DNA from: Octopus sinensis
Taxonomy: Eukaryota
Assembly: GCF_006345805.1 (NCBI RefSeq)
Contig: NC_043023.1
Location: 16,430,001-16,494,000, forward strand
Direction of reading: 5' to 3'
DNA: 64,000 bases
Shown here: positions 13,144 to 56,072 of the stretch, in pieces
Numbering within the stretch: the first letter of the stretch is position 1
Layout of the letters: each line of letters begins with the position of its first letter
Notes under the pieces: generated by a model
Database searches by the model: none
Seen by the model: the letters and a program-made list of their open reading frames with translations, nothing else
What the model was told of the DNA's origin: nothing
Made by a program: the position numbers and the translations under genes

Positions 13144-13521
13144 ATGCCACCAGCACCAGCAACTGCTTCGAAAGGAGCCAAGAAGGCTTCCAAGGCCAAG
13201 ACCTCTCGCCCTGCCGGGGACAAGAAACGTAAGAAGAAGAGGAAGGAAAGTTATTCCATCTACATCTACAAAGTGATGAAGCAAGTCCACCCGGACACTG
13301 GCATCTCCAGCAAAGCTATGTCCATCATGAACAGTTTTGTCAACGATCTGTTCGAAAGAATAGCTTCTGAATCCAGCCGCTTGGCTCACTACAACAAACG
13401 TTCGACCATCAGTAGCCGTGAGGTGCAGACTGCTGTCCGTCTTCTCCTTCCTGGTGAGTTGGCCAAACACGCCGTCTCTGAGGGTACCAAGGCCGTCACC
13501 AAATACACTAGCAGCAAATAA
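13144..13521 (+). CDS. H2B: Histone H2B
   Basis: True ATG at 13144: [10 protein letters not shown]…[12 protein letters not shown]…AVTKYTSSK. Confidence 0.99.
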
Positions 13522-17393: not shown

Positions 17394-18392
<999 letters not shown>

Positions 18393-36150: not shown

Positions 36151-37799
36151 ATGGGTTTGCACACACACACACACACATACTGACAGATAACATTTTTCTA
36201 TCAAAATTTCAAGTTTCAATTCACGATGTGTATGTAATTATGTATGTGTGTGAGCCCACAAATTTTGTTTACGTATTAAATTCTGATATAATCGTCACCT
36301 TCACAATCCGAATAATATTTGTAGAAAATTCCACTAAAGAAATATCCATTTTTCCAAAAATTATGAGGAAATAAAACCAACTGATGTGAATTTTCCAAAA
36401 CTTTTCACCCCACCCTCAGAAAACTTTTTCACAACAAATTCCAATATATCCATTAATATCCATTTGTCAGAAAGTTATGAGTAAAGAAAGGTTTGTGATT
36501 TAAGGGAGATCTGCCTGTTGTTTCTAACACATCCCACAACCACCTTTCTTGTTTCTTCCTCACTCTAACATGTATTCATGTTTTTCAATATTTTTGTCCC
36601 CATAAAAGCATTTATGCTGTTAAAACAAATTGGTTTTAAAATTTGATTTTTGGTAGAATTCTGGTTTAAGAACCCCATATAACCCCTCATAACCTTTTTT
36701 AACTTTTTGGAATAAAAAAAAAAATTCAGTACATTTTCAGTAAAATATTCAAAACTAAAGTTTTTCAATTTTATATTTCAGCTGATGTAGAGAAACTAAG
36801 TTCCTTTTGTTGCTTGCATTTCCCAGTTGATTCTTGAAAATTTCCATTGCATCAAGCCATAAGTACAAGGTATGTTGGAATAAAAGAGATTTTGCTGTAA
36901 ATGTTTGTAGTGGATCTTGCTAGCATGAAGTGGATTCGATCCACCATAGCCGAATTTAAATTAACACTGCAACAAAACTTTTCCCATGGTGGAACAATGG
37001 TTTTTTTTTCTCTGACAGCAGTTTTACATTTTCCAGATGCCTTTAGCTAGGCCGAAATAATGTCTTCACTACTTGACCCTTTCTAACCTTTTCTACTTCA
37101 CCAAAAGCTAGAATAGAGATAACAAAACCACCAACTAAATCTATGATATATCTATCCTTCTGGTTAGTTATAAAAGCAAGAACACCCCAAGCAAAAATCA
37201 GTAAGTCAACTCCTGTGATAACACAACAAGTTCAGTCACTTTGGTGATGACTCACCAAGTTAGCCACTACAATGATAACTCAGTGAGAACAAAGTCTGGC
37301 TGACCAGCTAGAACCTTGTTCAGAGGGAGAAATGAAGTTTACTGTCAGCAACTGCGAGACAACGTCCCACACCTTACAACTCTCTCTAGCTCTAATTCTG
37401 TTCTCTTACAACATCATTCTATCTCTCTCTCTGGAATTACTACTAAACAATGAAGAGGATACAAACACAAACTTTACTTCGCATGCTTTTGGATTTTTCA
37501 AAACCTGCCCGTCGATGCAAGTTATTGGTAATGTAACAATAAATAAATATTTCCTTAAAACTTCATGCCTTGTTCCTCTTTGACATCCTACAGTATGCAA
37601 TTATAACAACAAATTTTCATCGTCACAAATGCTGACAATCGACACATCGTAATATTGTTTACTAATCAATTTCTACCGTTACAATTACTGACCCTCAACT
37701 TCAACTAAAAATTTTATCGTTACAAATAGTCTAATAAAAATATACCCGTTACAACTTGTGGCCCCGAAGAAGAGCATTGTAGCCTTCACAAAGATTAAC

Positions 37800-38092: not shown

Positions 38093-38662
38093 AACTGGCG
38101 AGCCCGTGGAAAAAGATTGGCTGCCTTCTGAACCTATGTTACCAACAATTTGGTGAACCCGTGTAAAGAGAAATAATACCTTTTCATGCTAGATGCTGAT
38201 TCGAATTAAAGAACTGGACCATCTACAGTCGCTAACCCAAAGGAAAATGAATGACAACCTTCGACACCACCATGATGCACCCTCCATCGATCTGCTACAG
38301 GAAGCACTATTCTGCAATGCAATCTACGATGCACTTCGCTGCAATGCAACACAGCCGACGCACAAGGTATTCGCTTACATGCCAAGAAACTAACTGGAAG
38401 AAAATATGGAAGCCCGCACATGCAACCTTTTCAGCACACACACGCTTTTCGTCTCATCCTGATGTACAAACCCTGCATGGTTTGTGAACTTTTGCATGGA
38501 CGTAAGTCTCTCACATAGACTTTGAGCAACTCTTTTTATTTGCATGCACATCTATTCACTTTCAGCTGTAGACAAAGGACACTATTTTCAGCTAAGTTTG
38601 TTATTTTTGCTTATTTTATTATTGTTCTGTTTGCACTGCACACTTTCATTTGTTTACGAGTT

Positions 38663-41119
38663 ACACATATTCCACGATGCACACATTCCACGAAGCACAT
38701 ATTCCACGAAGCACATTCTGCGATGAACATATTCCCTGATGCACATATTCCACAATACATATATTCCATGTTGCACATATTCCATGAAGTGCATTCCACG
38801 ATGCACATATTCCACAAAGCACATTCCCCGATGCACATATTCCACGATGCACATATTCCACGAAGCACATTCTGCGATGCATATATTCCACAAAGCACAT
38901 TCCCCGATGCACATATTCCACGATGCACATATTCCACGAAGCACATTCTGTGATGCATATATTCCACAAAGCACATTCCCCGATGCACATATTCCACGAT
39001 GCACATATTCCACGAAGCACATTCTGCGATGCATATATTCTACGAAGCACATTCTGTGATGCATATATTCCACGAAGCACATTCTGTGATGCATATATTC
39101 CACAAAGCACATTCCCCCGATGCACATATTCCATGAAGCACATTCTGTGATGCATATATTCCACAAAGCACATTCCCCCGATGCACATATTCCATGAAGC
39201 ACATTCTGTGATGCATATATTCCACAAAGCACATTCCCCCGATGCACATATTCCACGAAGCACATTCTGTGATGCATATATTCCACAAAGCACATTCCCC
39301 CGATGCACATATTCCACGAAGTACATTCTGTGATGCATATATTCCACAAAGCACATTCCCCGATGCACATATTCCACGATGCACATATTCCACGAAGCAC
39401 ATTCTGCGATGCATATATTCCACGAAGCACATTCCCCCGATGCACATATTCCACGAAGTACATTCTGTGATGCATATATTCCACAAAGCACATTCCCCGA
39501 TGCACATATTCCACAATACATATATTCCACAAAGCACATTCTGCGATGCATATATTCCACGAAGCACATTCTGTGATGCATATATTCCACGAAGCACATT
39601 CTGTGATGCATATATTCCACAAAGCACATTCCCCCGATGCACATATTCCATGAAGCACATTCTGCGATGCACATATTCCCTGATGCACATATTCCACAAT
39701 ACATATATTCCACAAAGCACATTCTGTGATGCACATATTCCACGAAGTGCATTCCCCGATGCACATATTCCACGAAGCACATTCTGTGATGCATATATTC
39801 CACAAAGCACATTCCACGATGCACATATTCCACGATGCACATATTCCCTGATGCACATATTCCGCAATACATATATTCCACGTTGCACATATTCCACGAA
39901 GCGCATTCCACGATGCACATATTCCACAAAGCACATTCCCTGATGCACATATTCCACAATACATATATTCCACGTTGCACATATTCCGCGATGCACATAT
40001 TCCACAATACATATATTCCACAAAGCACATTCTGTGATGCACATATTCCACGAAGTGCATTTCCCGATGCACATATTCCACGAAGCACATTCTGTGATGC
40101 ATATATTCCACAAAGCACATTCCACGATGCACATATTCCACGATGCACATATTCCCTGATGCACATATTCCGCAATACATATATTCCACGTTGCACATAT
40201 TCCACGAAGCGCATTCCACGACGCACATATTCCACAAAGCACATTCCCTGATGCACATATTCCACAATACATATATTTCACGTTGCACATATTCCGCGAT
40301 GCACATATTCCACAATACATATATTCCACAAAGCACATTCTGTGATGCACATATTCCACGAAGTGCATTCCCCGATGCACATATTCCACGAAGCACATTC
40401 GGTGATGCATATATTCCACAAAGCACATTCCACGATGCACATATTCCACGATGCACATATTCCCTGATGCACATATTCCGCAATACATATATTCCACGTT
40501 GCACATATTCCACGAAGCGCATTCCACGATGCACATATTCCACAAAGCACATTCCCTGAGGCACATATTCTACAATACATATATTCCACGTTGCACATAT
40601 TCCGCGATGCACATATTCCACAATACATATATTCCACAAAGCACATTCTGTGATGCACATATTCCACGAAGTGCATTCCCCGATGCACATATTCCACGAA
40701 GCACATTCTGTGATGCATATATTCCACAAAGCACATTCCACGATGCACATATTCCACGATGCACATATTCCCTGATGCACATATTCCGCAATACATATAT
40801 TCCACGTTGCACATATTCCACGATGCACATATTCCACAAAGCACATTCCCTGATGCACATATTCCACAATACATATATTCCACGTTGCACATATTCCACG
40901 AAGCACATTCTGCGATGCACACATTCTGCAATGCACATCTTCCATGAAGCGCATCCTACGATGCACATATTCCGCGTTGCACACATTCCGCGTTACACAT
41001 ATTCCACCCAGCACATTCCGTGAAGTACATATTCCACGAAGCACATTCCACAAAGCACATTCTGTGTTGCACACATTCTGTGTTGCACACATTCCACGAA
41101 GCACATTCCACGTTGCACA
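38663..41119. repeat. 2.45-kb minisatellite of 14/16-bp variant units with a 308-bp higher-order repeat
   Basis: Units such as GATGCACATATTCCAC, GAAGCACATTCTGT and AAAGCACATTCCCC. Identical blocks start at 39835, 40143, 40451 and 40759. Confidence 0.92.
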
Positions 41120-41251
41120 AATTATGTGACGATTCGTTTCACTAAAGCAGCTAAATCCATTTGCATCTCTTTTTGAATGTTCCTTATTATTATTATTCAT
41201 ATTTTGAATGTACATTTTTTTTGTTCACTTTGAAAATGTTTGTATTGTTGC

Positions 41252-41629: not shown

Positions 41630-43790
41630 ATTAAAAACAAATTGGTTTGAAAATTTGATTTTTGGTGGAATTCTCGTTTAAGAACCCCATATGACCCCTC
41701 ATAACCTTTTTTAGCTTTTTGGAATTTAAAAATAAATTCAGCACATTTTCAGTGAAATATTCAAAAATATAGTTTTTTAAATTTTATATTTCAGCTTATG
41801 TAGAGAAACTAAGTTCCTTTTCTTGCTTGTATTTCAATATTTTTATCCCCATAAAAACATTTATGCTATTAAAACAAATTGGTTTGAAAATTTGATTTTT
41901 TGTGGAATTCTTGTTTAAGTACCCCATATGACCCCTCATAACCTTTTTTAACTTTTTGGAATTTAAAAATAAATTCAGCACATTTTCAGTGAAATATTCA
42001 AAAATATAGTTTTTTAATTTTATATTTCAGCTTATGTAGAGAAACTAAGTTCCTTTTCTTGCTTGTATTTCAATATTTTTATCCCCATAAAAACATTTAT
42101 GCTATTAAAACAAATTGGTTTGAAAATTTGATTTTTGGTGGAATTCTGGTTTAAGAACCCCATATGACCCCTCATAACCTTTTCTAACTTTTTGGAATTT
42201 AAAAAAAAATTCAGCACATTTCCAGTGAAATATTCAAAAATATAGTTTTTTAATTTTATATTTCAGCTTATGTAGAGAAACTAAGTTCCTTTTCTTGTTT
42301 GTATTTTCCAGTTGGTTCTAACATGTATTCATCATCATCATCATCATCGTTTAGCGTCCGCTTTCCATGCTAGCATGGGTTGGACGGTTCAACTGGGCTC
42401 TGGGAAGCCAGAAGGCTGCACCAGGCCCAGTCTGATCTGGCAATGTTCTACGGCTGGATGCCCTTCCTAACACCAACCACTCCATGAGTGTAGTGGGTGC
42501 TTTTTACATGTCACCGGCACAGGTGCCAGGGGAGGCTGGCAAACGGCCACGATCGGATGGTGCTTTTTATGTGCCGTCCCCATAAAAACATTTATGCTAT
42601 TAAAAAAAATTGGTTTGAAAATTTGATTTTTTGTGGAATTCTTGTTTAAGAACCCCATATAACCCCTCATAACATTTTCTAACTTTTTGGAATTTAAAAA
42701 AAAATTCAGTACATTTTCAGTGAAATATTCAAAAATATAGTTTTTTAATTTTGTATTTCAGCTTATGTACAGAAACTAAGTTCCTTTTCTTGCTTGTATT
42801 TCAATATTTTTATCCCCATAAAAACATTTATGCTATTAAAACAAATTGGTTTGAAAATTTGATTTTTGGTGGAATTCTCGTTTAAGAACCCCATATGACC
42901 CCTCATAACCTTTTTTAACATTTTGGAATTTAAACATAAATTCAGTACATTTCCAGTGAAATATTCAAAAATATAGTTTTTTAATTCTGTATTTCAGCTT
43001 ATGTACAGAAACTAAGTTCCTTTTCTTGCTTGTATTTCAATATTTTTATCCCCATAAAAGCATTTATGCTATTAAAAGAAATTGGTTTGAAAATTTGATT
43101 TTTGGTGGAATTCTGGTTTAAGAACCCCATATGACCCCTCATAACCTTTTCTAACTTTTTGGAATTTAAAAAAAAATTCAGTACATTTCAAGTGAAATAT
43201 TCAAAAATATAGTTTTTTAATTTTATATTTCAGCTTATGTAGAGAAACTAAGTTCCTTTTCTTGTTTGTATTTCCCAGTTGGTTCTAACATGTATTCATC
43301 ATCATCATCATCGTTTAGCGTCCGCTTTCCATGCTAGCATGGGTTGGACGGTTCAACTGGGGTCTGGGAAGCCAGAAGGCTGCACCAGACCCAGTCTGAT
43401 CTGGCAATGTTTCTATGGCTGGATGCCCTTCCTAATGCCAACCACTCTGTGAGTGTAGTGGGTGCTTTTTACGTGTCACCGGCACAGGTGCCAGACGAGG
43501 CTGGCAAACGATCACAATCAGATGATGCTTTTTATGTGCCATCCCCATAAAAACATTTATGCTATTAAAAAAAATTGGTTTGAAAATTTGATTTTTTGTG
43601 GAATTCTCGTTTAAGAACCCCATATAACCCCTCATAACCTTTTCTAACTTTTTGGAATTTAAAAAAAAATTCAGTACATTTTCAGTAAAATATTCAAAAA
43701 TATAGTTTTTTAATTTTATATTTCAGCTTATGTAGAGAAACTAATTTCCTTTTCTTGCTTGTATTTCCCAGTTGGTTCTAACATGTATGG
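41630..43790. repeat. ~236-bp satellite array with two embedded family D SINEs (~967-bp higher-order unit)
   Basis: CCCCATAAAAAC at 41847 and 42083, among others; SINEs at ~42330-42575 and ~43297-43540 share identical junctions. Confidence 0.88.
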
Positions 43791-45031
43791 TTTTTCAATC
43801 ATCACCTTCACAATCCGAATGATATTTGTAGAAAATTCCACTAAAGAAATATCCATTTTTCCAAAAGTTATGAGGAAATAAAGCCAACTGATGTGAATTT
43901 TCCAAAACTTTTCACTCCACCCTCGGAAAACTTTTTCACATCAAATTCCGATATATCCATTAATATCCATTTGTCAGAAAGTTATGAGTAAAGGAAGGTG
44001 TGTGATTTAAGGGAGATCTGCCTGTTGTTTCTAACACATCCCACAACCACCTTTCTTGTTTCTTCCTCATTCTAACATGTATTCATGTTTTTCAATATTT
44101 TTGTCCCCATAAAAACATTTATGCTATTTAAAAAAACTGGTTTGAAAATTTGATTTTTGGTGGAATTCTCGTTTAAGTACCCCATATAACCCCTCATAAC
44201 CTTTTTACTTTTTAAATTTTAAAAAAATTCAGTACATTTTCAGTAAAATTCTAAAAAATAATATCTTTTATTTTTTTCTTTCAGAAACTAAGTTCTTTTC
44301 GTTGTTTGTATTTCCCAGTTGGTTTTTGAAACTTCCCATTGCATCAAGCCACAACTATAAGGTTTGTCCAAATAGAAGAGATTCTGTTGTAAATATTGGA
44401 TTGTATAGTCATAAAAACACAAGATATATATATGAGGGAGATTTAGCTGTTGTGTCTTGCACATCACACAGACTTTCACAGAATTACATGTAGACATAGA
44501 TTAAAGAACAAACAAAATGTGAAAACTAATTCCTTATTTTAAGCATTAAAAATGTAAATTCAGGACTCTATCAATATCTGTAACTTACTGCAAACTCATT
44601 AGGAGATGTGGAGAGAGAGAGAGACAACCCAAAGCAAAACGACCAAGGAGCCGCCGGTTGCCGAAACAGACACTCCGAGGATTTTCACCAGAGCCCCGTC
44701 TGCCGGGTTGTGGGCCTAATACCACTCGGTGTCAGACCAAACTGCCTTGGGTGGCCCTACCAGGAACCAAAGTTCCCGACAGCATAGCTCTGACACTACC
44801 CGTTGCCAGTGTCCCCACCACGGTGAGGAGGGGATGGACTTCGGGGACGCATGATTTTTGAATGCAACATGAGTTATGGTGCTTGAGTGCATTGAACTAG
44901 AATGAGGGTTGTCATTCAAAAGTCCAAGAAAAAAACAAAGTTTGTAAATGCGAGGAAATACCATGGAGTTTCAGGGAACCTGACATGATCTGTAACTGTT
45001 GGATTTTCAGAAAAACTATACAAGAAGGTGC

Positions 45032-45425
45032 AGGAGTGGCTGTGTGGTAAGTAGCTTGCTTACCAACCACATGGTTCCGGGTTCAGTCCCACTGCGTGGA
45101 ATCTTGGGCAAGTGTCTTCTGCTATAGCCCCGGGCCGACCAATGCCTTGTGAGTGGATTTGGTAGACGGAAACTGAAAGAAGCCTTTCATATATATGTAT
45201 ATATATATATGTATGTGTGTGTCTGTGTTTGTCCCACTAGCATTGCTTCACAACCGATGCTGGTATGTTTACATCCCCGTCACTTAGCGGTTCGGCAAAA
45301 TAGACCGATAGAATAAGTACTGGGCTTACAAAGAATAAGTCCCAGGTTCGATTTGCTCGACTAAAGGTGGTGCTCCAGCATGGCCGCAGTCAAATGACTG
45401 AAACAAGTAAAAGAGTAAAGAGTAA
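45032..45425 (+). mobile_element. Full-length family A SINE
   Basis: Head to AGTAAAAG-type tail. Confidence 0.8.
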
Positions 45426-45734
45426 GAAGAATGTTCACAGTTAGAAGTTTCAAATGATTTAGAATTTTCTTCAGAAAACGTTTATTTTGACGTGAAAATG
45501 CTGTAGCAAAAAGTGTTTGTGCAAGTTCAAACTGCACTTGTCTCTACTGTACAGCGTTCTGTAGTATTCGAAATAGTTAAGAATAAGATCTCCAATGCCA
45601 CAGGCTCGACCACAAATCTATTAAAGAGTGACTGATGATATTGTGACTGTTTGTTTTTCTCAGCCTGACCAGCCTCGGACCCTGGGCTATAAACTTTGTT
45701 ATTTTGCAGCTTTTCAAAATTATTTTTTCAGATC

Positions 45735-45780
45735 ATGGCTAAATGGATCTTGTTCTGCTATTTGTTTGTAACATTTGACC
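45735..45780 (+). CDS. Exon 1 (signal peptide) of a novel Ig-like type I membrane protein
   Basis: Acceptor TTTTTTCAG|ATC then ATG GCT; encodes MAKWILFCYLFVTFD + c; donor |GTAAGT, phase 1. Confidence 0.75.
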
Positions 45781-45967
45781 GTAAGTTTTATTTATATTTT
45801 ATTTAATTTCTTTCCATAACTTATTTTTGTTAAGGCAAACTTACTCAGGTGCACAGGGGTCTGGAATGGGGTCACTCACATAAGGAGGATTTTCTTTGTT
45901 TTGGTAGGGATTTTCCCAATTTTGTTTTCATCACAGCTTTAGAAATGATGCATTTTATGGAAGAAAA

Positions 45968-46552
45968 TTTGGTCCAGTGGTTAGGGCAGCGGACTCGCGG
46001 TTTCGATTCCCAGACCGGGCGTTGTGAGTGTTTATTGAGCGAAAACACCTAAAGCTCCACGAGGCTCCGGCAGGGGATGGTGGTGATCCCTGCTGTACTC
46101 TTTCACCACAACTTTCTCTCACTCTTACTTCCTGTTTCTGTTGTACCTGTATTTCAAAGGGCCGGCCTTGTCACTCTCTGTGTCACGCTGAATATCCCCA
46201 AGAACTACGTTAAGGGTACACGTGTCTGTGGAGTGCTCAGCCACTTACACGTTTATTGAGCGAAAACACCTAAAAGCTCCACGAGGCTCCGGCAGGGGAT
46301 GGTGGTGATCCCTGCTGTACTCTTTCACCACAACTTTCTCTCACTCTTACTTCCTGTTTCTGTTGTACCTGTATTTCAAAGGGCCGGCCTTGTCACTCTC
46401 TGTGTCACGCTGAATATCCCCGAGAACTACGTTAAGGGTACACGTGTCTGTGGAGTGCTCAGCCACTTACACGTTAATTTCACGAGCAGGCTGTTCCGTT
46501 GATTCGGATCAACCGGAACCCTCATCGTCGTAACCGACGGAGTGCTTCCATC
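45968..46552 (+). mobile_element. Family B SINE with an internal ~220-bp tandem duplication
   Basis: TTTATTGAGCGAAAACACC at ~46031 and ~46253. Confidence 0.8.
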
Positions 46553-46557
46553 CATCC

Positions 46558-46712
46558 ACCGTCTTATTTCTGGAGTGCAGTCACCATCTCGATTTCTTTT
46601 GGAGCCAAGGAAGATGAAATCATCAACCACTTCAATCTCTTCATTATCGATCTTGATGCTGGTGTTTGTTGTGGCTGCTGTTGACATGATCTTCGTTTTC
46701 TTAACCACAACC
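46558..46712 (-). pseudogene. RTE (BovB-like) reverse transcriptase fragment
   Basis: KKTKIMS…IKIDNEEIEVVDDFIFLGSK…DGDCTPEIRR matches the post-RT region of RTE LINEs. Confidence 0.75.
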
Positions 46713-46926
46713 CGTCACTATTTAATAAATTCTCAGATGTCTTTACTTTAACAGCTTCGTTTCCCTCTGTGTCTGCTGTAGTGTTTCCTGGTTTATCGAA
46801 ATACGTGGGAATTTCATTTATGTATCCAATATTTCCTGGGGAGAACCCAAACATTTTACACTCCTTCAGAACAAATTTTTTCAGTTTCTGAGCAATATGA
46901 GTTTTTTTTTTGGCAGTCGCAGTCAC
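46713..46926 (-). pseudogene. pogo/Tigger-type DDE transposase fragment
   Basis: THIAQKL…IGYINEIPTYFDKPGNTT…G…VKVKT resembles the pogo IGNMDETPxxFDMPxxxTxxxxGxKxV motif. Confidence 0.6.
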
Positions 46927-47460
46927 TTATCAATACATGTCAGCCTCAACATCCAAAGCCCTCATGTTCCACCATTTTGTCCTGCACCTTTCAGGGTCCA
47001 CCTCTTCCACAGATTGCCTCCGCAGTTAGAGATCAGCACTTCTTTACATAGCAGTCCTTGTCCGTTCATTTTTAGAATGACATTGTAAGACAGGTGTAAA
47101 AGGATGACCCATTACCAGTTTAAACATGAAACAGGTAGAATCTTTGTGCCAGGTATGGCTACTTTAACTCGTTAGCAATTAGTTTATTCCGTTTAATGTA
47201 ATGCTCCTTTAGACTTGGTTTTTGAATTAATCATTCGTTATCTTGTAGTTTTGACATTTTGATGATGTGATTGTTTATTTTTAGACTGACATTGTAGGGT
47301 AGGTGTGAGGGGCTGGACCCAGCCACTTAGAACATAAAACAGATATGGCTGCTTTAATCCTTTAGCAATCAAATTACTGTGAAATGTAATGTTCATTTAT
47401 TCACATTGTTTTGAATTATTTCATCTTAAAATCAAAAAATTTTGTTTTCATCTTTTACAG

Positions 47461-47499
47461 ATTTGTCAAGGGCACAAAAGTATAATATCACCCAAAGTG
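47461..47499 (+). CDS. Exon 2, 39-nt micro-exon (end of signal peptide plus first strand)
   Basis: CATCTTTTACAG| … |GTAAAT; phase 1-1; encodes (H)LSRAQKYNITQS(G). Confidence 0.72.
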
Positions 47500-47689
47500 G
47501 TAAATATATTCTTCTTTCCTACATTTGACCCTCCAACATGGAGTATAGGCCACTCATAATTGAATTCCATGTTGCATAATTTTTCACCTCTGTACTTATA
47601 CTCTGCCATGAATGTCCCCCTTTCTCTAGTTCCTTTTGTGTTGATCTACGCCACTAGTTCTTAGGCCTACCTCTCTTTCTATATCCAAG

Positions 47690-47947
47690 TTAAGCTAAGT
47701 TAAGGTAAGTTAAGTTAATTTTTGGGCTCAAAAAGCAAAAAAGCAAGGCCATGTAGGGGGACATGGAGTTATGTACAGGGTGGTGTTCATGCAAAGAGTT
47801 CAGGCCATTTGTGGTCAAGGGAGACTTTGAACCAAGCAGTCGTCAGCATCTTCACTATCTCGTCCGGCAGCTTATTCCACGGATCCGCAACCCGGACGGA
47901 GAAGGCCCCTCTTCTTCGATTGAGATGAAATTGTCGCAGATAGAGTG
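47690..47947 (-). mobile_element. CR1/L2-type LINE 3' end
   Basis: LYLRQFHLNRRRGAFSVRVADPWNKLPDEIV…FKVSLDHKW followed by a (TAACT)n-like tail. Confidence 0.75.
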
Positions 47948-48114
47948 CATTCCACTCTGCGCTTTGCTCTACAATGATACAAAGAGTGGCGGTTTGATCT
48001 CCACATGAACGGTTCTTCCTAAATCCAGCTTCTTCTTTACTGCTGTCCTCATCATCTCTAAAAGTATCCTGTTAAAATCTTTTCCGGGAGCTGATAATAG
48101 CCTAATCCCTCTAT

Positions 48115-48600
48115 AAGATGCTGAGTACTCATCAGCCAATTATAGAGGTTTTCCATTAATAAAAAAGTTATCAAATCAAGTGGCAACATTATAGAGAAGG
48201 TAGATATATAGACAAAGATGTGGATTTAAATTTTAAGAACATATGAGGTACTAAGATTTGGTTGTTCCACTACATCATACGTTCTTAAAATTAAAATCCA
48301 CATCTTTGTCTATATATCTACCTTCTCTATAATGTTGCCACGTGATATGAACATTTTTGTATTAACAGAAAACCTCTATAATTGGCTGATGAGTGTTCAG
48401 CATTTTAAAACTGTTGTAATACTTACAACATTTAATAAAATGATGTAGTACGAAACGATCGTACCAAATTACCGGAGTCATTCTTATTGCTTATTTTCAT
48501 TATAATCACCCCACGGATTTCTATGGATAACACCATACAAAATTCTGGTGCATCTAAATTAAGTACCATATTCATTTGAATCTAAATTTTTGCTGAACTT
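48115..48600. mobile_element. Penelope-like foldback carrying a hammerhead ribozyme
   Basis: ~135-bp inverted arms (48115-48248 and 48272-48407); 3' sequence matches 10752-10915. Confidence 0.7.
48379..48471 (+). ncRNA. Type I hammerhead ribozyme motif
   Basis: TAATTGG-CTGATGA(48386)-long helix II-C-GAAAC(48452)-GATC-GTA(48461-63)-CCAAATTA; complete catalytic core with a palindromic helix III. Confidence 0.68.
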
Positions 48601-48816
48601 ATATATATATATATTTGCCAACATAATGTGGCAGTCTTGGTTAGGACGAATGATACTGTAAATTTAGTCTTAGGAAACATCATCTATCTGCATACCAATG
48701 GTCTCTGGGTTATTTCCCTTCATCAGCACAGAATAACTGCTCGGCTACAGATGACTCCACTAAACTCTTGTCCAAAATATATACTTTCCAAAGTGACACA
48801 AAGTCTCTGATCTAAC

Positions 48817-49197
48817 AAATAGAAAATTATTTCTAAATCTCTGAACAAAAGACATTGAGTAACAGTACTCTAGGGTAGAGATTATTTGCCAACATAATGT
48901 GGCAGTCCTGGTTAGGACGATTGTTACTGTTCCTTAGCCCTAGGAAATATCGTCTCCAGCAGGCTATATGACACACTAGCTGCATCCTTATATTTTCAAA
49001 CAAGGGAGTTTAGCATCCCATAGGACATAGATAGCGTGTCATATACCCAGCTGGAGGCAGTGTTTCCTAGGGCTAGATAACAGTAACAATCATCCTAACT
49101 AGGACTGCCATATTATGCTGGCAAATAATCCTTACTCTCGAGTAATGTTACTGAATGTTTCTCATTCAGGGACTTAGAAATAATAATTTTCTATTTA
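48817..49197. mobile_element. Foldback MITE with ~160-bp arms
   Basis: 48817-48978 is inverted relative to 49035-49197; partial copy at 48614-48700. Confidence 0.8.
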
Positions 49198-49514
49198 CAT
49201 ATATATATATATACATATATATAAACAATGGGCTTCTTTCAGTTTCCATCTATCAAATCCACTCACAAGGCTTTGAAACACACAAGTTTGTATGTATATA
49301 TATACACACACAAGTGTGTATGTATATATATACACACACATATACATACACACACATATACATACAATGGGCTTCTTTCAATTTCCATCTAGAAAATCCA
49401 CTCACAAGGCTGATGCTGTAGTAGAAGACACTTTCCCGAGGTGCTCTGCAGTGGGACTGAACCCAGGACCATGTGATTTGGAAGCAAACTTCTTAACTGA
49501 TTTCGTTATTTCAG

Positions 49515-49763
49515 GAATTGCTGTGCTCAATGGATGTCTCACCCTTACGATAACAATACCTGATATGAAACGACCGGTGGTTTGGAAGTGCCGCAATTAT
49601 AAATATGAATGTGACAAGACATGCGCTGATGGCCCTGACTATAAAGTGACACAGGATGGAGATACCTCCACGCTTTGGATCAAAAAAGTAACTGAGAAAT
49701 GTTTGACTTGGAGATTTGATGATGACAACCTTAATGCTGCAGACATTGATTTGAAGATAAAGA
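49515..49763 (+). CDS. Exon 3, atypical Ig-like domain 1
   Basis: TTATTTCAG| … |GTAAGG; 249 nt, phase 1-1, open frame; …LTLTITIP…VVWKC…STLWIKKVT…TWRF…IDLKIK. Confidence 0.8.
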
Positions 49764-50342
49764 GTAAGGAAATGATTTATAATAATTTCTTTATTGACCA
49801 CAGAGGGCTAACACAAAGGAAAACATTCGGGAGGGTCTAGTGTGGGTTTTAGCATGTAAAAAGTCATACAAAGAATAAAAGAAATTCAAAGTAACATCCC
49901 TGATAGTTTGGGGACTTTGAAGGGCCACACGTAAAGAAAGCCCACAAAATCCAAGGTCTCCCTGGCCACCAGGGTTGATGCCCTCTCCCAGTCTTTCCTC
50001 TCCAATATACAGGTACACTCTGAGAGAAGGCCCATTCACTCAGGTAATGCTCACCCCTCTCACCCACCTTTCAACAAACTGCTTGGAAGCCAGCACTTAC
50101 CTCTCCACCCTGATTTTCCTCTTCAAGTAAAACCTGAAAAAGTTTATTAGGGTTTTGACAAAATGGCAGTTGCTGGTCTTCAGCCCTTTCAGACATGTCC
50201 ACTGTATGATCCCCTTTGCCATGGGCCCCGAGCAGATAAAAACTGGTTGCCCTTCCTGGTTGAGGGAAAGTAGAGGGGCCATCTTCACAATGGACTTCCA
50301 AAATTTTCCAAAAATCAAAATTTTTGTTTTCATCTTTTACAG

Positions 50343-50381
50343 GTTTCTCAAGTGCAAACATTTACAAGATCACCCAAAGTG
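50343..50381 (+). CDS. Exon 4, 39-nt micro-exon copy 2
   Basis: CATCTTTTACAG| … |GTAAAT; phase 1-1; encodes (S)FSSANIYKITQS(G). Confidence 0.72.
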
Positions 50382-50565
50382 GTAAATATATTCTTGTTTC
50401 CTACATTTGACCCTCCAACGTGGAGTATAGGCCACTCATAATTGAATTCCATGTTGCATAATATTTCGCCTCTGTACTTATACTCTGCCATGAATGTCCT
50501 CCTTTCTCTAGTTCCTTTTGTGTTGATCTACGCCACGGAGTTCTTAGGCCTACCTTTCTTTTTAC

Positions 50566-51690
50566 ATCCAACCGGTTTCCACTTTAAACACTTTTTGCTA
50601 CATTTAGTGTGTCTTTTCTAATTGTGCTACCAATCCACTTCCTCCTTTTCTTAAATATTTGCTCCCTAATCAAAACTTGATTTGTTCATTGCCATAGCTC
50701 CATATTGCTTATGTGTTTGGGCCATCTAATTTTAAGTATACTACGCAAGCATCTGTTGATGAATGGTTTTATTTGCTTATTTGATTTAACTGTTGTTTGC
50801 CATGTCTCAGCCCCATACAATAACACCGCTTTTACGTTCGTGTTAAAAATTTTAACTTAAGTTAAGATAATTTTTGGGCTCAAAAAGCAAAAAAGCAAGG
50901 CCATGTAGGGGGACTTGGAGTTATGTACAGGGTGGTGTTCATGCAAAGAGTTCAGGCCATTTGTGGACAAGGGAGACTTTGAACCGAGCGGTCGTCGGCA
51001 TCTTCATTATCTCGTCCGGCAGCTTATTCCACGGAACCGCAACCCGGATGGAGAAGGGCCCTCTCCTTCGATTGAGATGAAATCGTCACAGATAGAGCTT
51101 TTCGGAGTGACCCCGCAGCCGACGCTCTGGAGCAGGAGTGAAGAACATCTCTTCCGAGAGGTTACTTTGTTGTTTATTGAAATTACACTTGCGCTCCATA
51201 CTTTCTTTAACAGGTGAAAAACGGTCCTTGCCTTACTTATTCTCACCTTAATATCTTCGTCGGTGCCACCTGAAAACGTTATCTTACTACCTGAATACAT
51301 AAACTTGGCTACATCCTCTTGTTCACCAGTTTCTAGTTTAATACATTCATTGTTTACTTCATTAACGTGCATAATTTTTGATTTGAGGTTGACTTTCAAT
51401 CCTAGTTTGGCAGCTATTGCTTCTAATTTTGACATTTTATTTTGCATTTGGCTATGTTTGTGAAAGCAGCCCCCTATCATCTGCAAAGTCGAGATCTTCT
51501 ACAGCTTCCACATCCGTCCATTCAATGCTTGTTTGGCTTTCAATCGTAGTTTCCTTCATAATCCAATCTATAACTAATAGAAATAAAAAGGGTGTAAGGA
51601 TACAGCCCTGTCGAACTCCTGTTTTTACTTCAAATTTATCTGTAGCTCCGTTTCCATGCAAGACTCGGCATGACATTCCTTGGTATGTTG
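50566..51690 (-). pseudogene. RTE-clade LINE RT relic, interrupted by a CR1 3' end (50852-51160)
   Basis: GVRQGCILTPFLFLLVIDWIM…DLDFADD, then …IKVRISKARTVF…, and after the CR1 insert …IFNTNVKAVLLYGAETW…. Confidence 0.8.
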
Positions 51691-51712
51691 GTCTTATATA
51701 TATATATGTATA

Positions 51713-51970
51713 TCATCATCATCATCATCATCATCGTTTAACGTCCGCTTTCCGCGCTAGCACGGGTTGGACGGTTTGACCGGGTCTGGGAAGCCAGGGG
51801 CCGCACCAGGCTCCAGTCTGATCTGGCAGAGTTTCTACGGCTGGATGCCCTTCCTAACGCCAACCACTCCGTGAGTGGATTGGGTGCTTTTTACGTGACA
51901 CCTGCACAGGGGCCGGAGGGTCCGGCATCGGTCACGATCGGTTCGAGCATTTTAACGTGTCAGCGGCACG
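51713..51970 (-). mobile_element. Family D SINE-like element
   Basis: (CAT)n CGTTTAACGTCCGC…GGATGCCCTTCCTAACGCC. Confidence 0.75.
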
Positions 51971-51983
51971 GGGGCAACGAGGT

Positions 51984-52047
51984 CCGGGGTACTTTGGGGA
52001 TCGGGGTACTTTGGGGATCCAGGGTACTTTGGGGTCCGGGGTACTTA
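51984..52047. repeat. 4 x 17-18-bp GGGGTACTTTGGGGATC-type repeat
   Basis: Visible directly in the sequence. Confidence 0.85.
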
Positions 52048-53045
52048 GAATGGGTAGGGGGTATGTGGAATTGCTGCAGAAAGCAGCCCGGGTCTTTGTA
52101 GTCACAGCATTTATCGTCACTGAGTAACGTAATTAGGTAGAGGAAAGAAATACAGATATTCTAGAGTTGAGTTGGGGAGGGGGGGTCCAGTTGAGGCGGG
52201 TAATATAGGGGAGCAACCAGTGGGGAAGGTTGGGGTAAGGAGGAACGATGGCAGGAAGGGGTTGGTGAAGGTTCCTAAGAAATAAAAACGTAGGATATTG
52301 AAATAAAAACGTAGGATATTACGAGGCGGGAGGGTACTAAAGGGGGTGGTCGGAATGAGGCAGTGTCAGGAGGAAGCGTAAGATCGGTGGGCAGTTGATG
52401 AGCTATGGCGCTAGCAGCTTCTCTTTTCACAGTGAAAGCATATGAGGAGAAGGGGTAGTGGGTGGAGGGGGAGGGAGTAGGGCGTACCCGGTGTAGATGA
52501 GTAAGGCGTATCCGGTGTAGATGGTGAGAACAGGGTATACTGGTATTGGTGGTGGGGGGTGAGAACAGTGTTCACCGGTATTGGTGGTGGTGGTGGTGAG
52601 AACAGAGTTCACCGGTATTGGGGGTGGGGGGCGGGCGCATGGCGGAAAGATGGGAAGAGATGGGATTACGGCTTGAGGTAGCCTAAGGTTAAATTTTGTA
52701 GAGAGAGAGATAGGAAAGATAAATCAAGTTATGGCGAAGGCTTGAAAGTAGCCTAAAAGGTTAAATTTTTTCGTAACAATGTATGAATAAACGTAGTAAC
52801 AACGAATAAAAATAGTAAGATAAATTTTTAAGAACTTGCTGCGGGCATCGATCGAGAGTTGAAATTGAAGAAGAAAGTAAGTTGAATTGGGAATTTAAAT
52901 TGCAGATATATACACACACACACATACACACATACACACATACATATAAATATATATATACACACACACATACATACAATAGGCTTCTTTTAGTTTCCAT
53001 CTATCAAATCCACTCACAAGTCTTTGAAATACACAAGTGTGTATG

Positions 53046-53077
<32 letters not shown>

Positions 53078-53269
53078 TATACATACACATGCACACATAC
53101 ACACACACACACATACATAGAATGGGCTTCTTTCAATTTCCATCTTGAAAATCCACTCACAAGGCTGATGCTGTAGTAGAAGACACTTTCCTGAGGTGCT
53201 GTGTAGTGGGACTGAACCCAGGACCATGTGATTTGGAAGCAAACTTCTTAACTGATTTCTTTATTTCAG

Positions 53270-53518
53270 GAATTGCTGTGCTCAATAGAAACCTCACCCT
53301 TTCGATAACAATACCGAACATGAAACGACCGGTGGTTTGGAAGTGCCAGAATTATAAATATGAATGTGACAAGACATGCGCTGATGGCCCTGACTATAAA
53401 GTGACACAGGATGGAGATACCTCCAAGCTTTGGATCAAAAAAGTAACTGAGAAATGTTCGACTTGGAAATTTGATGATGACAACCTTAATATTGGAAGAA
53501 TTGATTTGGAGATAAAGA
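53270..53518 (+). CDS. Exon 5, atypical Ig-like domain 2
   Basis: TTATTTCAG| … |GTAAGG; 249 nt, phase 1-1; 71/83 aa identical to exon 3. Confidence 0.8.
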
Positions 53519-54149
53519 GTAAGGAAATGATTTATAATAATTTCTTTATTGACCACAGAGGGCTAACACAAAGGAAAACATTCGGGAGGGTCCAGCGTGG
53601 GTTTTAGCATGTAAAAAGTCATACAAAGAATAAAAGAAAGTCAAAGTAACATCCCTGATAGTTTGGGGACTTTGAAGGGCCACACGTAAAGAAAGCCCAC
53701 AAAATCCAATGTCTCCCTGACCACCAGGGTGGATGCCCTCTCCCGGTCTTTCCTCTCCAATATACAGGTACACTCTGAGAGAAGGCCCATTCACTCAGGT
53801 AATGCTCACCTCTCTCACCCACCTTTCAACAAACTGCTTGGAAGCCAGCACTTACCTCTCCACCCTGATTTTCCTCTTCAAGTGAAACCTGAAAAAGTTT
53901 ATTAGGGTTTTGACAAAATGGCAGTTGCTGGTCTTCAGCCCTTTCAGACATGTCCACTATATGATCCCTTTTGCCATGGGCCCCGAGCAGATAAAAACTG
54001 GTTGCCCTTCCTGGTTGAAGGAAAGTAGAGGGGCCATCTTCACAATGGACTCAGCTGATAGTTGTATATAATAAGGGTTTCTTTTATTTGCCACAAGGGC
54101 AAAGGATGAGGGGGTCAATACCAAGGTGTGTGTGTGTGGAGGTTATATT

Positions 54150-54690
54150 ATCTTTCTCTTTTTACTTGTTTCAGTCATTTGACTGTGGCCATGCTGGAGC
54201 ACCGCCTTTAGTCGAGCAAATCAACCCCAGGATTTATTCTTTGTACTTATTCTATGAGTTCTCTTTTGCCGAACCACTAAGTAACGGGGATGTAGACAAA
54301 CCAGCAACGGTTGTCAAGCGATGTTTGGAGGACAAACAGACACACAAACACACACATATATACGACGGGCTTCTTTCAGTTTCCATCTACCAAATTGGTT
54401 CTCTTGCTGAACCGCTAAGTAACGGGGACGTAGACACCCCAGCATCGGTTGTCAAGCAATGCTAGGGGGACAAACAGACACACAAACACACACATATATA
54501 CGACGGGCTTCTTTCAGTTTCCATCTACCAAATTGGTTCTCCTGCTGAACCGCTAAGTAACGGGAATGTAGACACCCCAGCATCGGTTGTCAAGCAATGC
54601 TAGGGGGACAAACAGACACACAAACACACACATATATACGACGGGCTTCTTTCAGTTTCCGTCTACCAAATCCACTCACAAGGCTTTATA
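54150..54690 (-). mobile_element. Family A SINE with ~3 tandem internal repeats
   Basis: The AACC(A/G)CTAAGTAACGGG…TTTCAGTTTCC block recurs three times. Confidence 0.75.
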
Positions 54691-54890
54691 TAACCAAGCT
54701 CATGTGTGCAACATAGTGTTACTGGAAATTTTGATGGGGACTTTTCCTTTAGATCACTTTGAAATGGAATTTGTATAACAGAAATGAAAGTATTTTTTAA
54801 TAGTTTAGTATGAAAATGGTCAAACTTGGGAGATATTACTATTTTTTATTAAAAACAAAAGGTATATATTTTATTGTTTGTCAATTGCAG

Positions 54891-55021
54891 ATCCGAAACC
54901 TAAACCTCATGGACTAACTACACTTGAGATTGTCGGAATCATTTTTGGCTCACTGATCCTTGCTGCAATCCTTGTTGGACTCGCTTATTTCGGCTACAAA
55001 TATTTTAAAAATAACCATTAG
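54891..55021 (+). CDS. Exon 6, stalk + transmembrane helix + short tail
   Basis: TTGTCAATTGCAG|; phase 1; (N)PKPKPHGLTTLEIVGIIFGSLILAAILVGLAYFGYKYFKNNH, TAG at 55019-55021; AATAAA at 55189. Confidence 0.8.
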
Positions 55022-56072
55022 TATAAGAATGCTACAATTTGTGTTCTTTTCATCATCATCATCATCATCATCGTCTGCTTTCCATGCTAGCATGGGTTGG
55101 ACGGTTCAACTGATGTCTGGAAAGAAGAAATAATTCTGTTTATCAGAATAAGACTTTCACTGACTGCATTGGCATAGTTGGTTTTTAAAATAAATTATAT
55201 CCATATTTTAGCAATATTTCTTCCAAAACTCTGCTCCGTCTTTTACTGGGAGTTTAAAAATCTTAAAAGCTATTAACTGTATATTTATCAATTTAGGACA
55301 ACAACTAATTTCATTTATATAATTAACAGACAAAACTACATCAATACACTAAACTTGAAATCAATAAATTTGAAACCGAAGGAGCTGAAGGGAAAAACAC
55401 AAACAGAAAAGGTCCACTTTTTAAAATATTCTTTCCAGAAAAAGTGAGCGGTAGCAGATTCAGCATGGAAAATTACATGAATATTCCAAATTTGAAAATT
55501 TTGACTGAATCTTAGAATGCAAAAGAATGTGATGTGTATGTGTGTGTGTGGTGTCCCACCAACATGTGCTATTCCAATATAATTGCAATCTACACTTTCT
55601 TAAAGGTATTTCTCAAAATTTTCATTTAAAAATACCCATTTTTCCAGAAGTTATGAAGAAACAAAGTCGGTGGGGTACATTTGCATATGTATACCCATTG
55701 CTTTAGCATAAATATCTTCAATTATAATCAAAGGGTCACTGCTTCCGTAGCCAACGAGAACAAAATCCTTAAGCATAGGAAATGAAGTGTGACCCATTTC
55801 TTCCACCTGTGACATTTGCCACAGTGAAGTTCTTACCATTGTTGGCGCCTCGCCTTACAGAATGGGTTCGGTGATCCCTATAAGGGTACTTGCTGCACCT
55901 CCTGTTTGTGTTTCTTTTGGTTTAGGATTTGTATTTTAATGTGGTATTGTATTATACGTGTATCATGTAAAGACATGTTATATAAGATAAAACAACAGAA
56001 AAATAAGCCAACAAATCAAAATATTTACTTATTAAAAAAAATAAAAACTCTTTACAGAATTTGCAAGAAAAA

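What the first reader, a model, noticed from the sequence alone, without database searches (positions are those of the whole stretch)
47428..54051. Tandemly duplicated [micro-exon + domain exon] cassette that permits combinatorial isoforms
Seen: unit 1 spans ~47428-50297 and unit 2 ~50311-54051, with the junction ~30 nt upstream of micro-exon 2, preserving its acceptor. Each micro-exon encodes an S-x-A signal-cleavage site, so exon 1 gives a plausible leader with either (…FDHLSRA|QKY or …FDRFSSA|NIY). All phases are compatible. Inference: Ig1-TM, Ig2-TM, Ig1-Ig2-TM and micro-exon/domain swaps are all in frame, like a nascent Dscam- or protocadherin-style variable cassette array.
Basis: partly seen in the sequence, partly recalled or inferred. 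Interest (0 to 1): 0.8.

Follow-up and report, generated by a model that had tools for sequence, protein, structure and literature searches.

The report
Duplicated Ig-like exon cassette in octopus
An uncharacterised octopus cell-surface gene carries two tandem copies of a "tiny exon plus Ig-like-domain exon" unit; the duplication is real and older than first thought, its coding parts change unusually fast, and mix-and-match splicing is possible but shown only by database gene models.

Summary
Window 47428-50296 and 50311-54051 are tandem copies, 92-94% identical in three blocks. Each holds a 39-nt micro-exon (47461-47499, 50343-50381) and a 249-nt domain exon (49515-49763, 53270-53518), all phase 1. 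The gene is Octopus sinensis LOC115225116, an uncharacterised type-I membrane protein of a family found only in octopods. AlphaFold and Foldseek show the unit is a divergent Ig-like domain.

The duplication is not nascent. The same junction occurs at the orthologous O. vulgaris locus and in a second O. vulgaris paralogue. Family members carry 1-5 such units.

Between the two species, most introns differ by 0-0.5% (up to about 2.5% downstream), but each domain exon differs by 10.4% and micro-exon 2 by 23%. The differences form mosaic patches shared with other cluster paralogues, so gene conversion is the likely cause. They avoid every conserved core residue.

The local RefSeq isoforms X5/X6 include all four exons. 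Other models in this gene, its sister gene and O. vulgaris skip domain exons, swap micro-exons or skip a whole unit. I could not inspect any reads.

Nothing indicates mutually exclusive splicing, and cassette 2 has no leader exon of its own. The Dscam/protocadherin analogy is therefore unsupported.

The parts
38420..38503 (+). Probable first (5'UTR) exon of the local transcripts X5/X6. RefSeq reads it as coding (MQPFQHTHAFRLILMYKPCMVCELLHG), but that ORF is not conserved in the O. vulgaris model.
   Evidence: tblastn of the X6 N-terminus; P0002/P0025; different upstream ORF in P0014
44281..44364 (+). 5'UTR exon 2 (reads ETKFFSLFVFPSWFLKLPIASSHNYK if translated). An alternative donor at 44391 gives X5. 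It is also the acceptor used by the H2B-fusion models in O. vulgaris.
45732..45780 (+). Leader exon: ATG at 45735, MAKWILFCYLFVTFD plus 1 nt (phase 1), donor gtaagt.
   Evidence: 45/46 nt identical to O. vulgaris
47428..50296 (+). Duplication unit 1.
   Evidence: self-BLAST; the repeat finder
47461..47499 (+). Micro-exon 1 (39 nt, phase 1-1): (H)LSRAQKYNITQS(G). It encodes the signal-peptide C-region plus strand A of the Ig-like domain.
   Evidence: 39/39 identical to O. vulgaris
49515..49763 (+). Domain exon 1 (249 nt, phase 1-1): the rest of Ig-like domain 1.
   Evidence: AF2 pLDDT 94
49515..49995 (+). Hyper-divergent tract versus O. vulgaris (about 10%, against 0-0.5% in the flanks). It covers domain exon 1 and about 230 nt of the downstream intron and is the inferred gene-conversion tract.
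50297..50310 (+). Duplication junction (filler CCAAAATTTTCC...). The same junction is found in O. vulgaris L001 and L003.
50311..54051 (+). Duplication unit 2.
50343..50381 (+). Micro-exon 2 (39 nt, phase 1-1): (S/R)FSSANIYKITQS(G). It differs at 8/39 nt from micro-exon 1 and at 9/39 from its O. vulgaris orthologue. The peptide is identical to micro-exon peptides of the sister gene LOC115225115.
51713..52906 (+). Insertion absent from both O. vulgaris loci: a SINE-like element plus G-rich minisatellites.
53270..53518 (+). Domain exon 2 (249 nt, phase 1-1): Ig-like domain 2. It has 20/249 nt differences from domain exon 1 and 26/249 from its O. vulgaris orthologue.
54891..55021 (+). Last coding exon: (N)PKPKPHGLTT stalk, a roughly 25-aa transmembrane helix, a 7-aa tail KYFKNNH, then the TAG stop.
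   Evidence: 131/132 nt identical to O. vulgaris

Best explanation
The region is the ectodomain-coding core of Octopus sinensis LOC115225116. The gene encodes a small type-I membrane glycoprotein with two tandem, divergent Ig-like domains, one transmembrane helix and a 7-residue tail. It belongs to an octopod-restricted family whose building block is a 39-nt micro-exon plus a 249-nt exon, repeated 1-5 times per gene. The micro-exon encodes the end of the signal peptide or the inter-domain linker, plus strand A. The two-unit state arose by a roughly 2.9-kb intragenic tandem duplication (shown). That event predates the O. sinensis/O. vulgaris split and also a duplication of the whole gene (shown by the shared junction). 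The default product is the two-domain protein (annotation-level evidence). Since the duplication, the coding parts have been overwritten in patches by gene conversion from other units in the same histone-interspersed cluster. This yields about 10% exon divergence between species whose most flanking introns differ by 0.5% or less (up to about 2.5% downstream), while the fold-defining residues are kept (pattern shown, mechanism inferred). Because every exon is phase 1-1, skipping or re-pairing exons keeps the frame. Some transcripts probably do this, but it looks like optional cassette skipping, not a regulated one-of-N choice (inferred). The likely role is cell-surface recognition or adhesion under diversifying pressure (inferred, untested).
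For: Duplication. Gene identity and isoforms; X5/X6 contain exon 1, m1, D1, m2, D2 and TM. Ig-like fold: AF2 pLDDT 94.2 and pTM 0.85. Foldseek top hits are VHH/VL, obscurin Ig32, titin and sDscam Ig1, TM-score 0.6-0.74. The family profile hits giant I-set proteins at E 1e-17 to 1e-27. Age: the O. vulgaris orthologue is colinear (98.1% over 15.7 kb) with the same exon order and junction. Paralogue L003 has the same junction. The family is seen in O. bimaculoides and Argonauta hians. Exon-focused divergence: D1 26/249, D2 26/249 and m2 9/39, against 3 mismatches in about 3.6 kb of intron, TM exon 1/132 and m1 0/39. Site patterns are 'orthologous' in the flanks but 'concerted' or singleton in the tract. 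D1 is closest to unit Dc of LOC115225115 (73/82), ahead of D2 (70) and its positional orthologue (64). Constraint: 28 variable positions avoid all 18 conserved positions, P = 5e-4. dN/dS is about 1-2.8 in most pairs.
Against: No transcript reads were examined. 'Default two-domain product' rests on Gnomon models. The O. vulgaris annotation has no two-domain model for the orthologue; its longest recorded product, P0014, jumps to a downstream gene. The exon-focused divergence could in part be an assembly or polishing artefact, since multi-mapped reads from paralogues can overwrite conserved segments. Against that, the two units remain distinct from each other in both assemblies. A second contig of the O. 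sinensis assembly agrees base for base apart from 1-nt indels, though it was presumably built from the same read set and pipeline. dN/dS near 1 alone cannot separate relaxed from diversifying selection. The function is entirely inferred.
Confidence: 0.7

Rival explanations
1. One reading: the two units (and the wider cluster) form a variable-cassette array whose exons are used combinatorially. Ig1-TM, Ig2-TM, Ig1-Ig2-TM and micro-exon swaps would give each cell or tissue a different receptor repertoire, as with Dscam, sDscam or clustered protocadherins.
For: All combinations are in frame. Both micro-exons would complete the signal peptide. RefSeq X8 skips D1 but keeps m1. X3 uses the leader and micro-exon of an upstream gene. 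LOC115225115 isoforms X8/X9/X11/X12 show domain-exon skipping and micro-exon swaps. O. vulgaris models skip the second unit (P0004) or all units (P0020). That annotation used Iso-Seq, PASA and EVM (PMC10700109).
Against: All of this is model-level evidence in a cluster of near-identical exons, where mis-mapping is a risk. The gene ranges are 345-380 kb across histone repeats, which is suspicious. X1-X6 include both units. No single-domain isoform of this gene is on record. Cassette 2 has no leader exon. Many paralogues have 2-3 long-diverged domains, which suggests fixed multi-domain proteins rather than alternatives.
Confidence: 0.2
2. One unit is a decaying, non-functional duplicate (pseudo-exons). 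The high nonsynonymous divergence would then be neutral drift.
For: dN/dS is about 1 between D1 and D2. D1 lost the family-conserved N-x-T sequon and gained an unpaired Cys (NGC). Micro-exon 2 lost the N-I-T sequon.
Against: Both units keep open frames and consensus splice sites in O. sinensis and in two O. vulgaris loci. Variable positions avoid all 18 conserved core positions, P = 5e-4. The 'NGC' variant is shared with two units of LOC115225115, so it is not a private lesion. Both exons are in RefSeq X1-X6.
Confidence: 0.06
3. The apparent exon hyper-divergence and mosaicism are assembly or polishing artefacts in a repeated cluster. Biologically this would be a plain conserved two-domain gene.
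For: The divergent tract coincides with the segment conserved among all paralogues (exon plus about 230 nt of intron), which is where multi-mapping reads accumulate. The O. sinensis assembly holds a redundant contig full of 1-nt indel errors.
Against: Within each assembly the two units stay different (20 and 12 differences), so they were not collapsed. The redundant O. sinensis contig has identical substitutions across 10.5 kb. Three O. vulgaris loci each carry distinct exon sequences.
Confidence: 0.1

Closest known systems
Internal tandem duplication of phase 1-1 Ig-domain exons in immunoglobulin-superfamily surface receptors (general mechanism; own knowledge)
   Same: Symmetric phase-1 exons, one domain per duplicated unit, a tandem copy added in frame, and the product a longer multi-domain type-I membrane protein.
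   Different: Here each domain is split into a 39-nt micro-exon plus a main exon. The internal micro-exons still carry the signal-peptidase-like L-S-x-A motif of the leader-proximal copy.
[quoted passage not shown] 2016, PMC4835542)
   Same: Tandem repeats of two-exon (or four-exon) units encoding Ig domains. Isoform diversity is attributed to cassette choice. One of many similar-scoring Foldseek matches is sDscam Ig1 (rank 36).
   Different: sDscam cassettes are each preceded by a promoter and are spliced one at a time to constant exons. Here cassette 2 has no leader exon and both units are included in the main models. There are no FNIII or other constant Dscam domains, and no sequence-level Dscam orthology was found.
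Drosophila Dscam1 mutually exclusive exon clusters
   Same: Arrays of similar, same-length, same-phase exons encoding Ig-domain parts.
   Different: Mutual exclusivity is not seen: annotated mRNAs contain both copies. There are only two copies. Docking and selector RNA elements were not looked for.
Vertebrate clustered protocadherins
   Same: A cluster-wide picture in which RefSeq models join several alternative upstream leader exons to shared downstream exons.
   Different: The domains are not cadherins. The variable unit is not a single large promoter-bearing exon. The long-range joins (380 kb across histone genes) are unverified.
Fast-evolving clustered Ig-superfamily receptor families shaped by gene conversion, such as KIR/LILR (own knowledge)
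   Same: Tandem clusters, mosaic exon sequences shared among paralogues, exon divergence far above intron divergence, and a conserved fold core.
   Different: This is a different lineage (octopods). The cytoplasmic tail is very short with no recognisable signalling motif, the ligand is unknown, and the family sits inside the histone gene repeat cluster.

Membership tests
Immunoglobulin superfamily (Ig-like beta-sandwich domain) | Seven- to nine-stranded Greek-key beta-sandwich fold | tested here: met
   AF2 on a 30-sequence family alignment gives pLDDT 94.2 with 7 main strands plus a short strand A. Foldseek against the PDB gives top hits VHH/VL, obscurin Ig32, titin and sDscam Ig1, with probability 1.00 and TM-score 0.6-0.74.
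Immunoglobulin superfamily (Ig-like beta-sandwich domain) | Sequence-profile match to a curated Ig family above threshold | tested here: inconclusive
   Pfam I-set scores 21.7-23.6 bits against a cut-off of 23.7. The PDB profile search gives only titin at E 0.44 and CD2 at E 3.8. The reverse search with the family profile hits proteins with 23-37 I-set domains at E 1e-17 to 1e-27, summed over many stretches.
Immunoglobulin superfamily (Ig-like beta-sandwich domain) | Canonical strand-B to strand-F disulfide with a Trp in strand C | tested here: not met
   The Trp (W32) is invariant, but strand B has no Cys. The conserved cysteines are C41/C45 (invariant, ECDxTC) and a co-varying pair, WKC and xKC, on strands C and F.
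Dscam1-type mutually exclusive exon cluster | Array of similar exons of equal length and phase | tested here: met
   Two 39-nt and two 249-nt exons, all phase 1-1.
Dscam1-type mutually exclusive exon cluster | Exactly one copy per mature mRNA | tested here: not met
   RefSeq isoforms X1-X6 contain both units. No single-unit isoform of this gene is in the protein collection. This is annotation-level evidence only.
Dscam1-type mutually exclusive exon cluster | Competing docking-site and selector RNA pairings | not tested
   The introns are full of SINE, LINE and MITE copies in both orientations. A search for complementary segments would not be interpretable without conservation and expression data.
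Clustered protocadherin / sDscam-type variable 5' cassette array | Each variable cassette starts with its own leader exon (promoter inferred) | tested here: not met
   Only one leader exon (45735) is present. tblastn finds no leader-like exon in the 579-nt D1-m2 intron or anywhere else in the window. Promoters were not scanned.
Clustered protocadherin / sDscam-type variable 5' cassette array | Alternative 5' units spliced to shared constant exons | tested here: inconclusive
   RefSeq X1-X3 join three different far-upstream leaders and an upstream domain to the in-window exons. However, the gene range is 380 kb across many histone genes, and read support cannot be inspected.
Constitutive internal domain duplication | Both copies intact, with consensus splice sites, included in the main transcript and conserved in a sister species | tested here: met
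   Two O. vulgaris loci show the same layout and junction. Inclusion is known only from gene models.

The most novel reading that the evidence does not exclude
The histone-interspersed cluster, including this gene and LOC115225115, works as an octopod-specific receptor-diversification system. Several alternative leader exons and optional [micro-exon + Ig exon] units spread over hundreds of kb would be spliced in different combinations onto shared transmembrane or GPI-type 3' exons. Germline gene conversion among the units would keep reshuffling the exposed residues. This would be a molluscan counterpart of sDscam/protocadherin isoform diversity combined with KIR-like rapid evolution.
Probability: 0.15. 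Interest if true: 0.8.

Novelty: new member of a known kind. Interest (0 to 1): 0.45.

Why it matters
Cephalopods lack the hypervariable Dscam of insects. Beyond the expanded protocadherins, little is known about how they diversify cell-surface recognition for immunity, neuronal wiring or self-recognition.

This is an octopod-only family of small Ig-like surface proteins built from freely re-combinable phase-1 units. Its exons differ about 10% between species about 2.5 My apart, while most introns differ by 0.5% or less. That makes it a concrete and cheaply testable candidate for a diversified recognition system.

If only the ordinary reading holds, it is still a clean example of domain gain by exon-pair duplication followed by exon-focused gene conversion. 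It is also a warning that RefSeq models in this cluster (380-kb genes, histone fusions) need read-level checking.

Tried and rejected
- **Literature search for the gene and family.** I searched for this gene and eleven relatives by LOC or UniProt identifier and found no papers.
- **Sequence search of the family profile against PDB chains.** Only non-significant Ig hits came back.
- **Looking in the window for other RefSeq isoform parts.** The upstream domain (D0), leaders A and B, and the alternative GPI-like C-terminal exon are not in the window, so those isoforms need introns of more than 47 kb and more than 9 kb.
- **Fetching the whole RefSeq gene.** The range is 380 kb and no DNA was returned.
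- **Using the unplaced contig that encodes LOC115230624 as a second haplotype to look for allelic variation.** It is an assembly duplicate, identical apart from 1-nt indels. Its 'frameshift' in D2 is a single missing T at 53336, so it gives no population information.
- **Testing whether D1/D2 divergence reflects point-mutation positive selection alone.** Rejected in favour of gene conversion. The divergent tract runs about 230 nt into the intron, and the variant patches are shared with other paralogues.
- **Pseudo-exon hypothesis.** Considered and largely rejected.


Full report
**1. What is in the sequence**

The window is animal DNA, 33-45% GC and full of SINE-like repeats. Self-BLAST of 45-56 kb confirms a direct tandem repeat in three colinear blocks:
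- 47428-47688 vs 50311-50571 (92.0%)
- 47700-47945 vs 50852-51097 (93.9%)
- 49193-50296 vs 52944-54051 (93.2% over 1114 nt)

The middles do not align. They hold different repeat insertions: a LINE-like reverse-transcriptase fragment and inverted-repeat elements.

Reading the sequence gives a gene on the + strand:

| Exon | Coordinates | Content |
|---|---|---|
| Leader exon | CDS 45735-45780 | MAKWILFCYLFVTFD plus 1 nt |
| Micro-exon 1 (m1) | 47461-47499 | |
| Domain exon 1 (D1) | 49515-49763 | |
| Micro-exon 2 (m2) | 50343-50381 | |
| Domain exon 2 (D2) | 53270-53518 | |
| Last exon | 54891-55021 | stalk, transmembrane helix, 7-aa tail, TAG |

All internal exons are phase 1-1 and have consensus AG/GT sites.

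**2. Identity of the gene**

A protein search with the conceptual two-domain product returns 100% matches to 'uncharacterized protein LOC115225116' of Octopus sinensis. Eight RefSeq isoforms are recorded:
- X5 and X6 are the local transcripts: 5'UTR exons at 38420-38503 and 44281-44364, then leader, m1, D1, m2, D2 and TM. RefSeq translates the UTR exons as an N-terminal extension.
- X1-X4 and X7 place a third domain (D0) and other leaders in front of m1.
- X8 has D0, then m1 joined directly to m2, then D2. Domain exon 1 is skipped.

D0, those leaders, and the alternative GPI-like C-terminal exon of X4 are not in the window. The RefSeq gene range is 380 kb and runs across many histone genes. 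These long-range joins are unverified, and in a cluster of near-identical exons they may be mapping artefacts.

**3. What the unit encodes**

All relatives found are octopod: O. sinensis, O. vulgaris, O. bimaculoides and Argonauta hians. They are unnamed proteins with 1-5 copies of a roughly 92-aa unit, followed by a transmembrane helix or a GPI-like hydrophobic tail.

Pfam gives only sub-threshold I-set hits, 22-23.6 bits against a 23.7 cut-off. The structural evidence is stronger:
- AlphaFold2 on a 30-unit alignment predicts an all-beta domain with pLDDT 94.2.
- Foldseek matches VHH/VL domains, obscurin Ig32, titin Ig and sDscam Ig1, with TM-scores of 0.6-0.74.
- The family profile finds giant I-set proteins at E 1e-17 to 1e-27.

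The unit is a divergent Ig-like domain. It has an invariant Trp and a non-canonical cysteine pattern: ECDxTC plus a co-varying WKC/xKC pair.

The micro-exon supplies the last four residues of the signal peptide when it comes first, or the inter-domain linker when it is internal. In both cases it also supplies strand A. Internal micro-exons across the family keep an L-[ST]-x-[AS] motif. This suggests that domains were repeatedly added by copying the leader-proximal [micro-exon + domain exon] pair.

**4. Age of the duplication**

A 99-kb O. vulgaris locus (L001) is colinear with the window:
- Window 36000-51713 matches L001 5716-21321 at 98.1%.
- Window 52906-57022 matches L001 21334-25424 at 96.4%.
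- Window 51713-52906 is absent from O. vulgaris.

L001 has the same exon order and the same duplication junction, CACAATGGACTT/CCAAAATTTTCC. A second O. vulgaris paralogue (L003) also has two units and the same junction.

The duplication therefore predates both the species split and a duplication of the whole gene. The split is dated at about 2.5 Mya in PMC10700109. The array is not nascent.

**5. Exon-focused divergence**

Divergence between the two species is very uneven:

| Region | Differences |
|---|---|
| Introns upstream of D1 | 3 mismatches in about 3.6 kb |
| m1 | 0/39 |
| Leader exon | 1/46 |
| TM exon | 1/132 |
| D1 | 26/249 |
| D2 | 26/249 |
| m2 | 9/39 |

The divergent tract around D1 runs from the exon start to about 230 nt into the downstream intron, 49515-49995.

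Site patterns change along the unit. In the flanks they are 'orthologous': unit 1 groups with unit 1 across species. Inside the tract they are 'concerted' (10 sites in the exon, 15 in the intron) or lineage-specific singletons.

The 'private' variants are in fact shared with other cluster members:
- The m2 peptide FSSANIYKITQSG is identical to micro-exon peptides of the sister gene LOC115225115.
- D1 is closer to that gene's unit Dc (73/82) than to D2 (70/82) or to its own positional orthologue (64/82).

I read this as patchy gene conversion among paralogous units. Pairwise dN/dS is about 1-2.8 in most pairs. The 28 positions that vary among the four units avoid all 18 family-conserved positions, P = 5e-4. 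Both units therefore remain under fold-preserving constraint.

Caveat: polishing with multi-mapped reads could mimic part of this signal. Against that, the units stay distinct within each assembly. A redundant O. sinensis contig also agrees at every substitution, although it was presumably built from the same read set and pipeline.

**6. Alternative use of the units**

Evidence for alternative use:
- X8 of this gene skips domain exon 1.
- In LOC115225115, isoforms X8 and X9 skip a domain exon, and X11 and X12 differ in which micro-exon precedes the same domain exon.
- O. vulgaris model P0004 goes from the first unit straight to the TM exon, skipping an intact second unit.
- O. vulgaris model P0020 has a leader joined directly to the TM exon.
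- The O. vulgaris annotation used Iso-Seq, PASA and EVM.

Evidence against:
- Every item above is a gene model, not a read.
- X1-X6 include both units.
- No single-unit isoform of this gene is on record.
- Cassette 2 has no leader exon of its own.
- Many paralogues have two or three long-diverged domains, which looks like fixed multi-domain proteins rather than alternatives.

My reading is that the default product is a two-domain protein, and that optional exon skipping is plausible (roughly even odds). A Dscam-like one-of-N choice or a protocadherin-like promoter choice is not supported.

**7. Comparison and novelty**

The closest formal analogue is the chelicerate sDscam arrangement of tandem two-exon Ig cassettes (PMC4835542). 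Its defining feature, a promoter before each cassette with single-cassette usage, is not matched here: cassette 2 has no leader exon, and both units are used in the main models. Promoters themselves were not scanned.

The evolutionary behaviour resembles fast-evolving clustered Ig-superfamily receptor families shaped by gene conversion (own knowledge).

The gene is already in RefSeq but is uncharacterised. No paper mentions it or its relatives by identifier. I class it as a new member of a known kind: a modular Ig-superfamily gene grown by exon-pair duplication. Its noteworthy twists are the split micro-exon, its position inside the histone repeat cluster, and the extreme contrast between exon and intron divergence.

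Noticed in passing
window 12497-12874 (-), 13144-13521 (+), 17394-17705 (-), 17982-18392 (+): A histone quartet (H2A, H2B, H4, H3) lies about 27 kb upstream. The RefSeq range of LOC115225116 spans many such quartets, so this Ig-like family is interleaved with the tandem histone repeat cluster.
   Followed up: partly
window 13450-13460: The H2B coding sequence contains a consensus splice donor, CCTG|GTGAGT. O. vulgaris models P0004 and P0020 splice exactly there (…LLLP|ETKFF…) into the homologue of the 5'UTR exon at 44281. The frame works in this window too. This implies either histone read-through chimeric transcripts or an annotation artefact.
   Followed up: partly
window 4971-6800 and 8791-9435 (+): Long ORFs encode arrays of C2H2 zinc fingers (609 and 214 aa). 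One database protein (P0041) fuses zinc fingers to a domain of this family, probably as a chimeric model.
   Followed up: no
window 38664-41123: A 2.5-kb minisatellite (periods 16, 30, 124 and 308 nt) with strong negative GC skew gives long spurious ORFs on both strands, up to 853 aa. Gene models in both species translate its + strand as an N-terminal extension (MHIFH… in P0014). It lies just downstream of the probable first exon.
   Followed up: partly
window 41634-44364 and 36792-36872: A tandem array with a 236-nt period carries at least five partial copies of the 5'UTR exon (ETKFLFLFVFPSWF…). Only the last copy, 44281-44364, matches the exon used in the models.
   Followed up: no
window 49332-49497 and 53081-53252; also 45017-45421 and 54151-54687: A tRNA-derived SINE fragment ends about 17 nt upstream of the acceptor of each domain exon and is present in all paralogues examined. 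SINE copies in the opposite orientation sit in the intron before exon 1. The inverted pairs could base-pair in the pre-mRNA and favour exon skipping; this is untested.
   Followed up: no
L002 (O. sinensis VCDQ01005272.1) versus window 39932-63405: This unplaced contig is a redundant copy of the locus. Across the re-aligned 45000-55999 stretch it shows no substitutions up to 55500 (two just after) and differs otherwise only by 1-nt indels. RefSeq LOC115230624 (P0006, 'frameshifted' domain 2) therefore looks like an assembly-error artefact: one T is missing at window 53336.
   Followed up: yes
L001 80850-89217 (O. vulgaris): A downstream one-unit paralogue has a stop codon inside its transmembrane exon (…AAILV*). 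The only recorded O. vulgaris model for the orthologue of the window gene (P0014) jumps about 70 kb from exon 1 and m1 into this paralogue, skipping the orthologue's own D1, m2, D2 and TM.
   Followed up: partly
window 46030-46479 and 54262-54671: Two young intronic tandem repeats are present: a 222-nt unit in 2 copies (98-99% identical) in intron 1, and a 138-nt SINE-derived unit in 3 copies (about 94% matches) in the intron before the TM exon.
   Followed up: no
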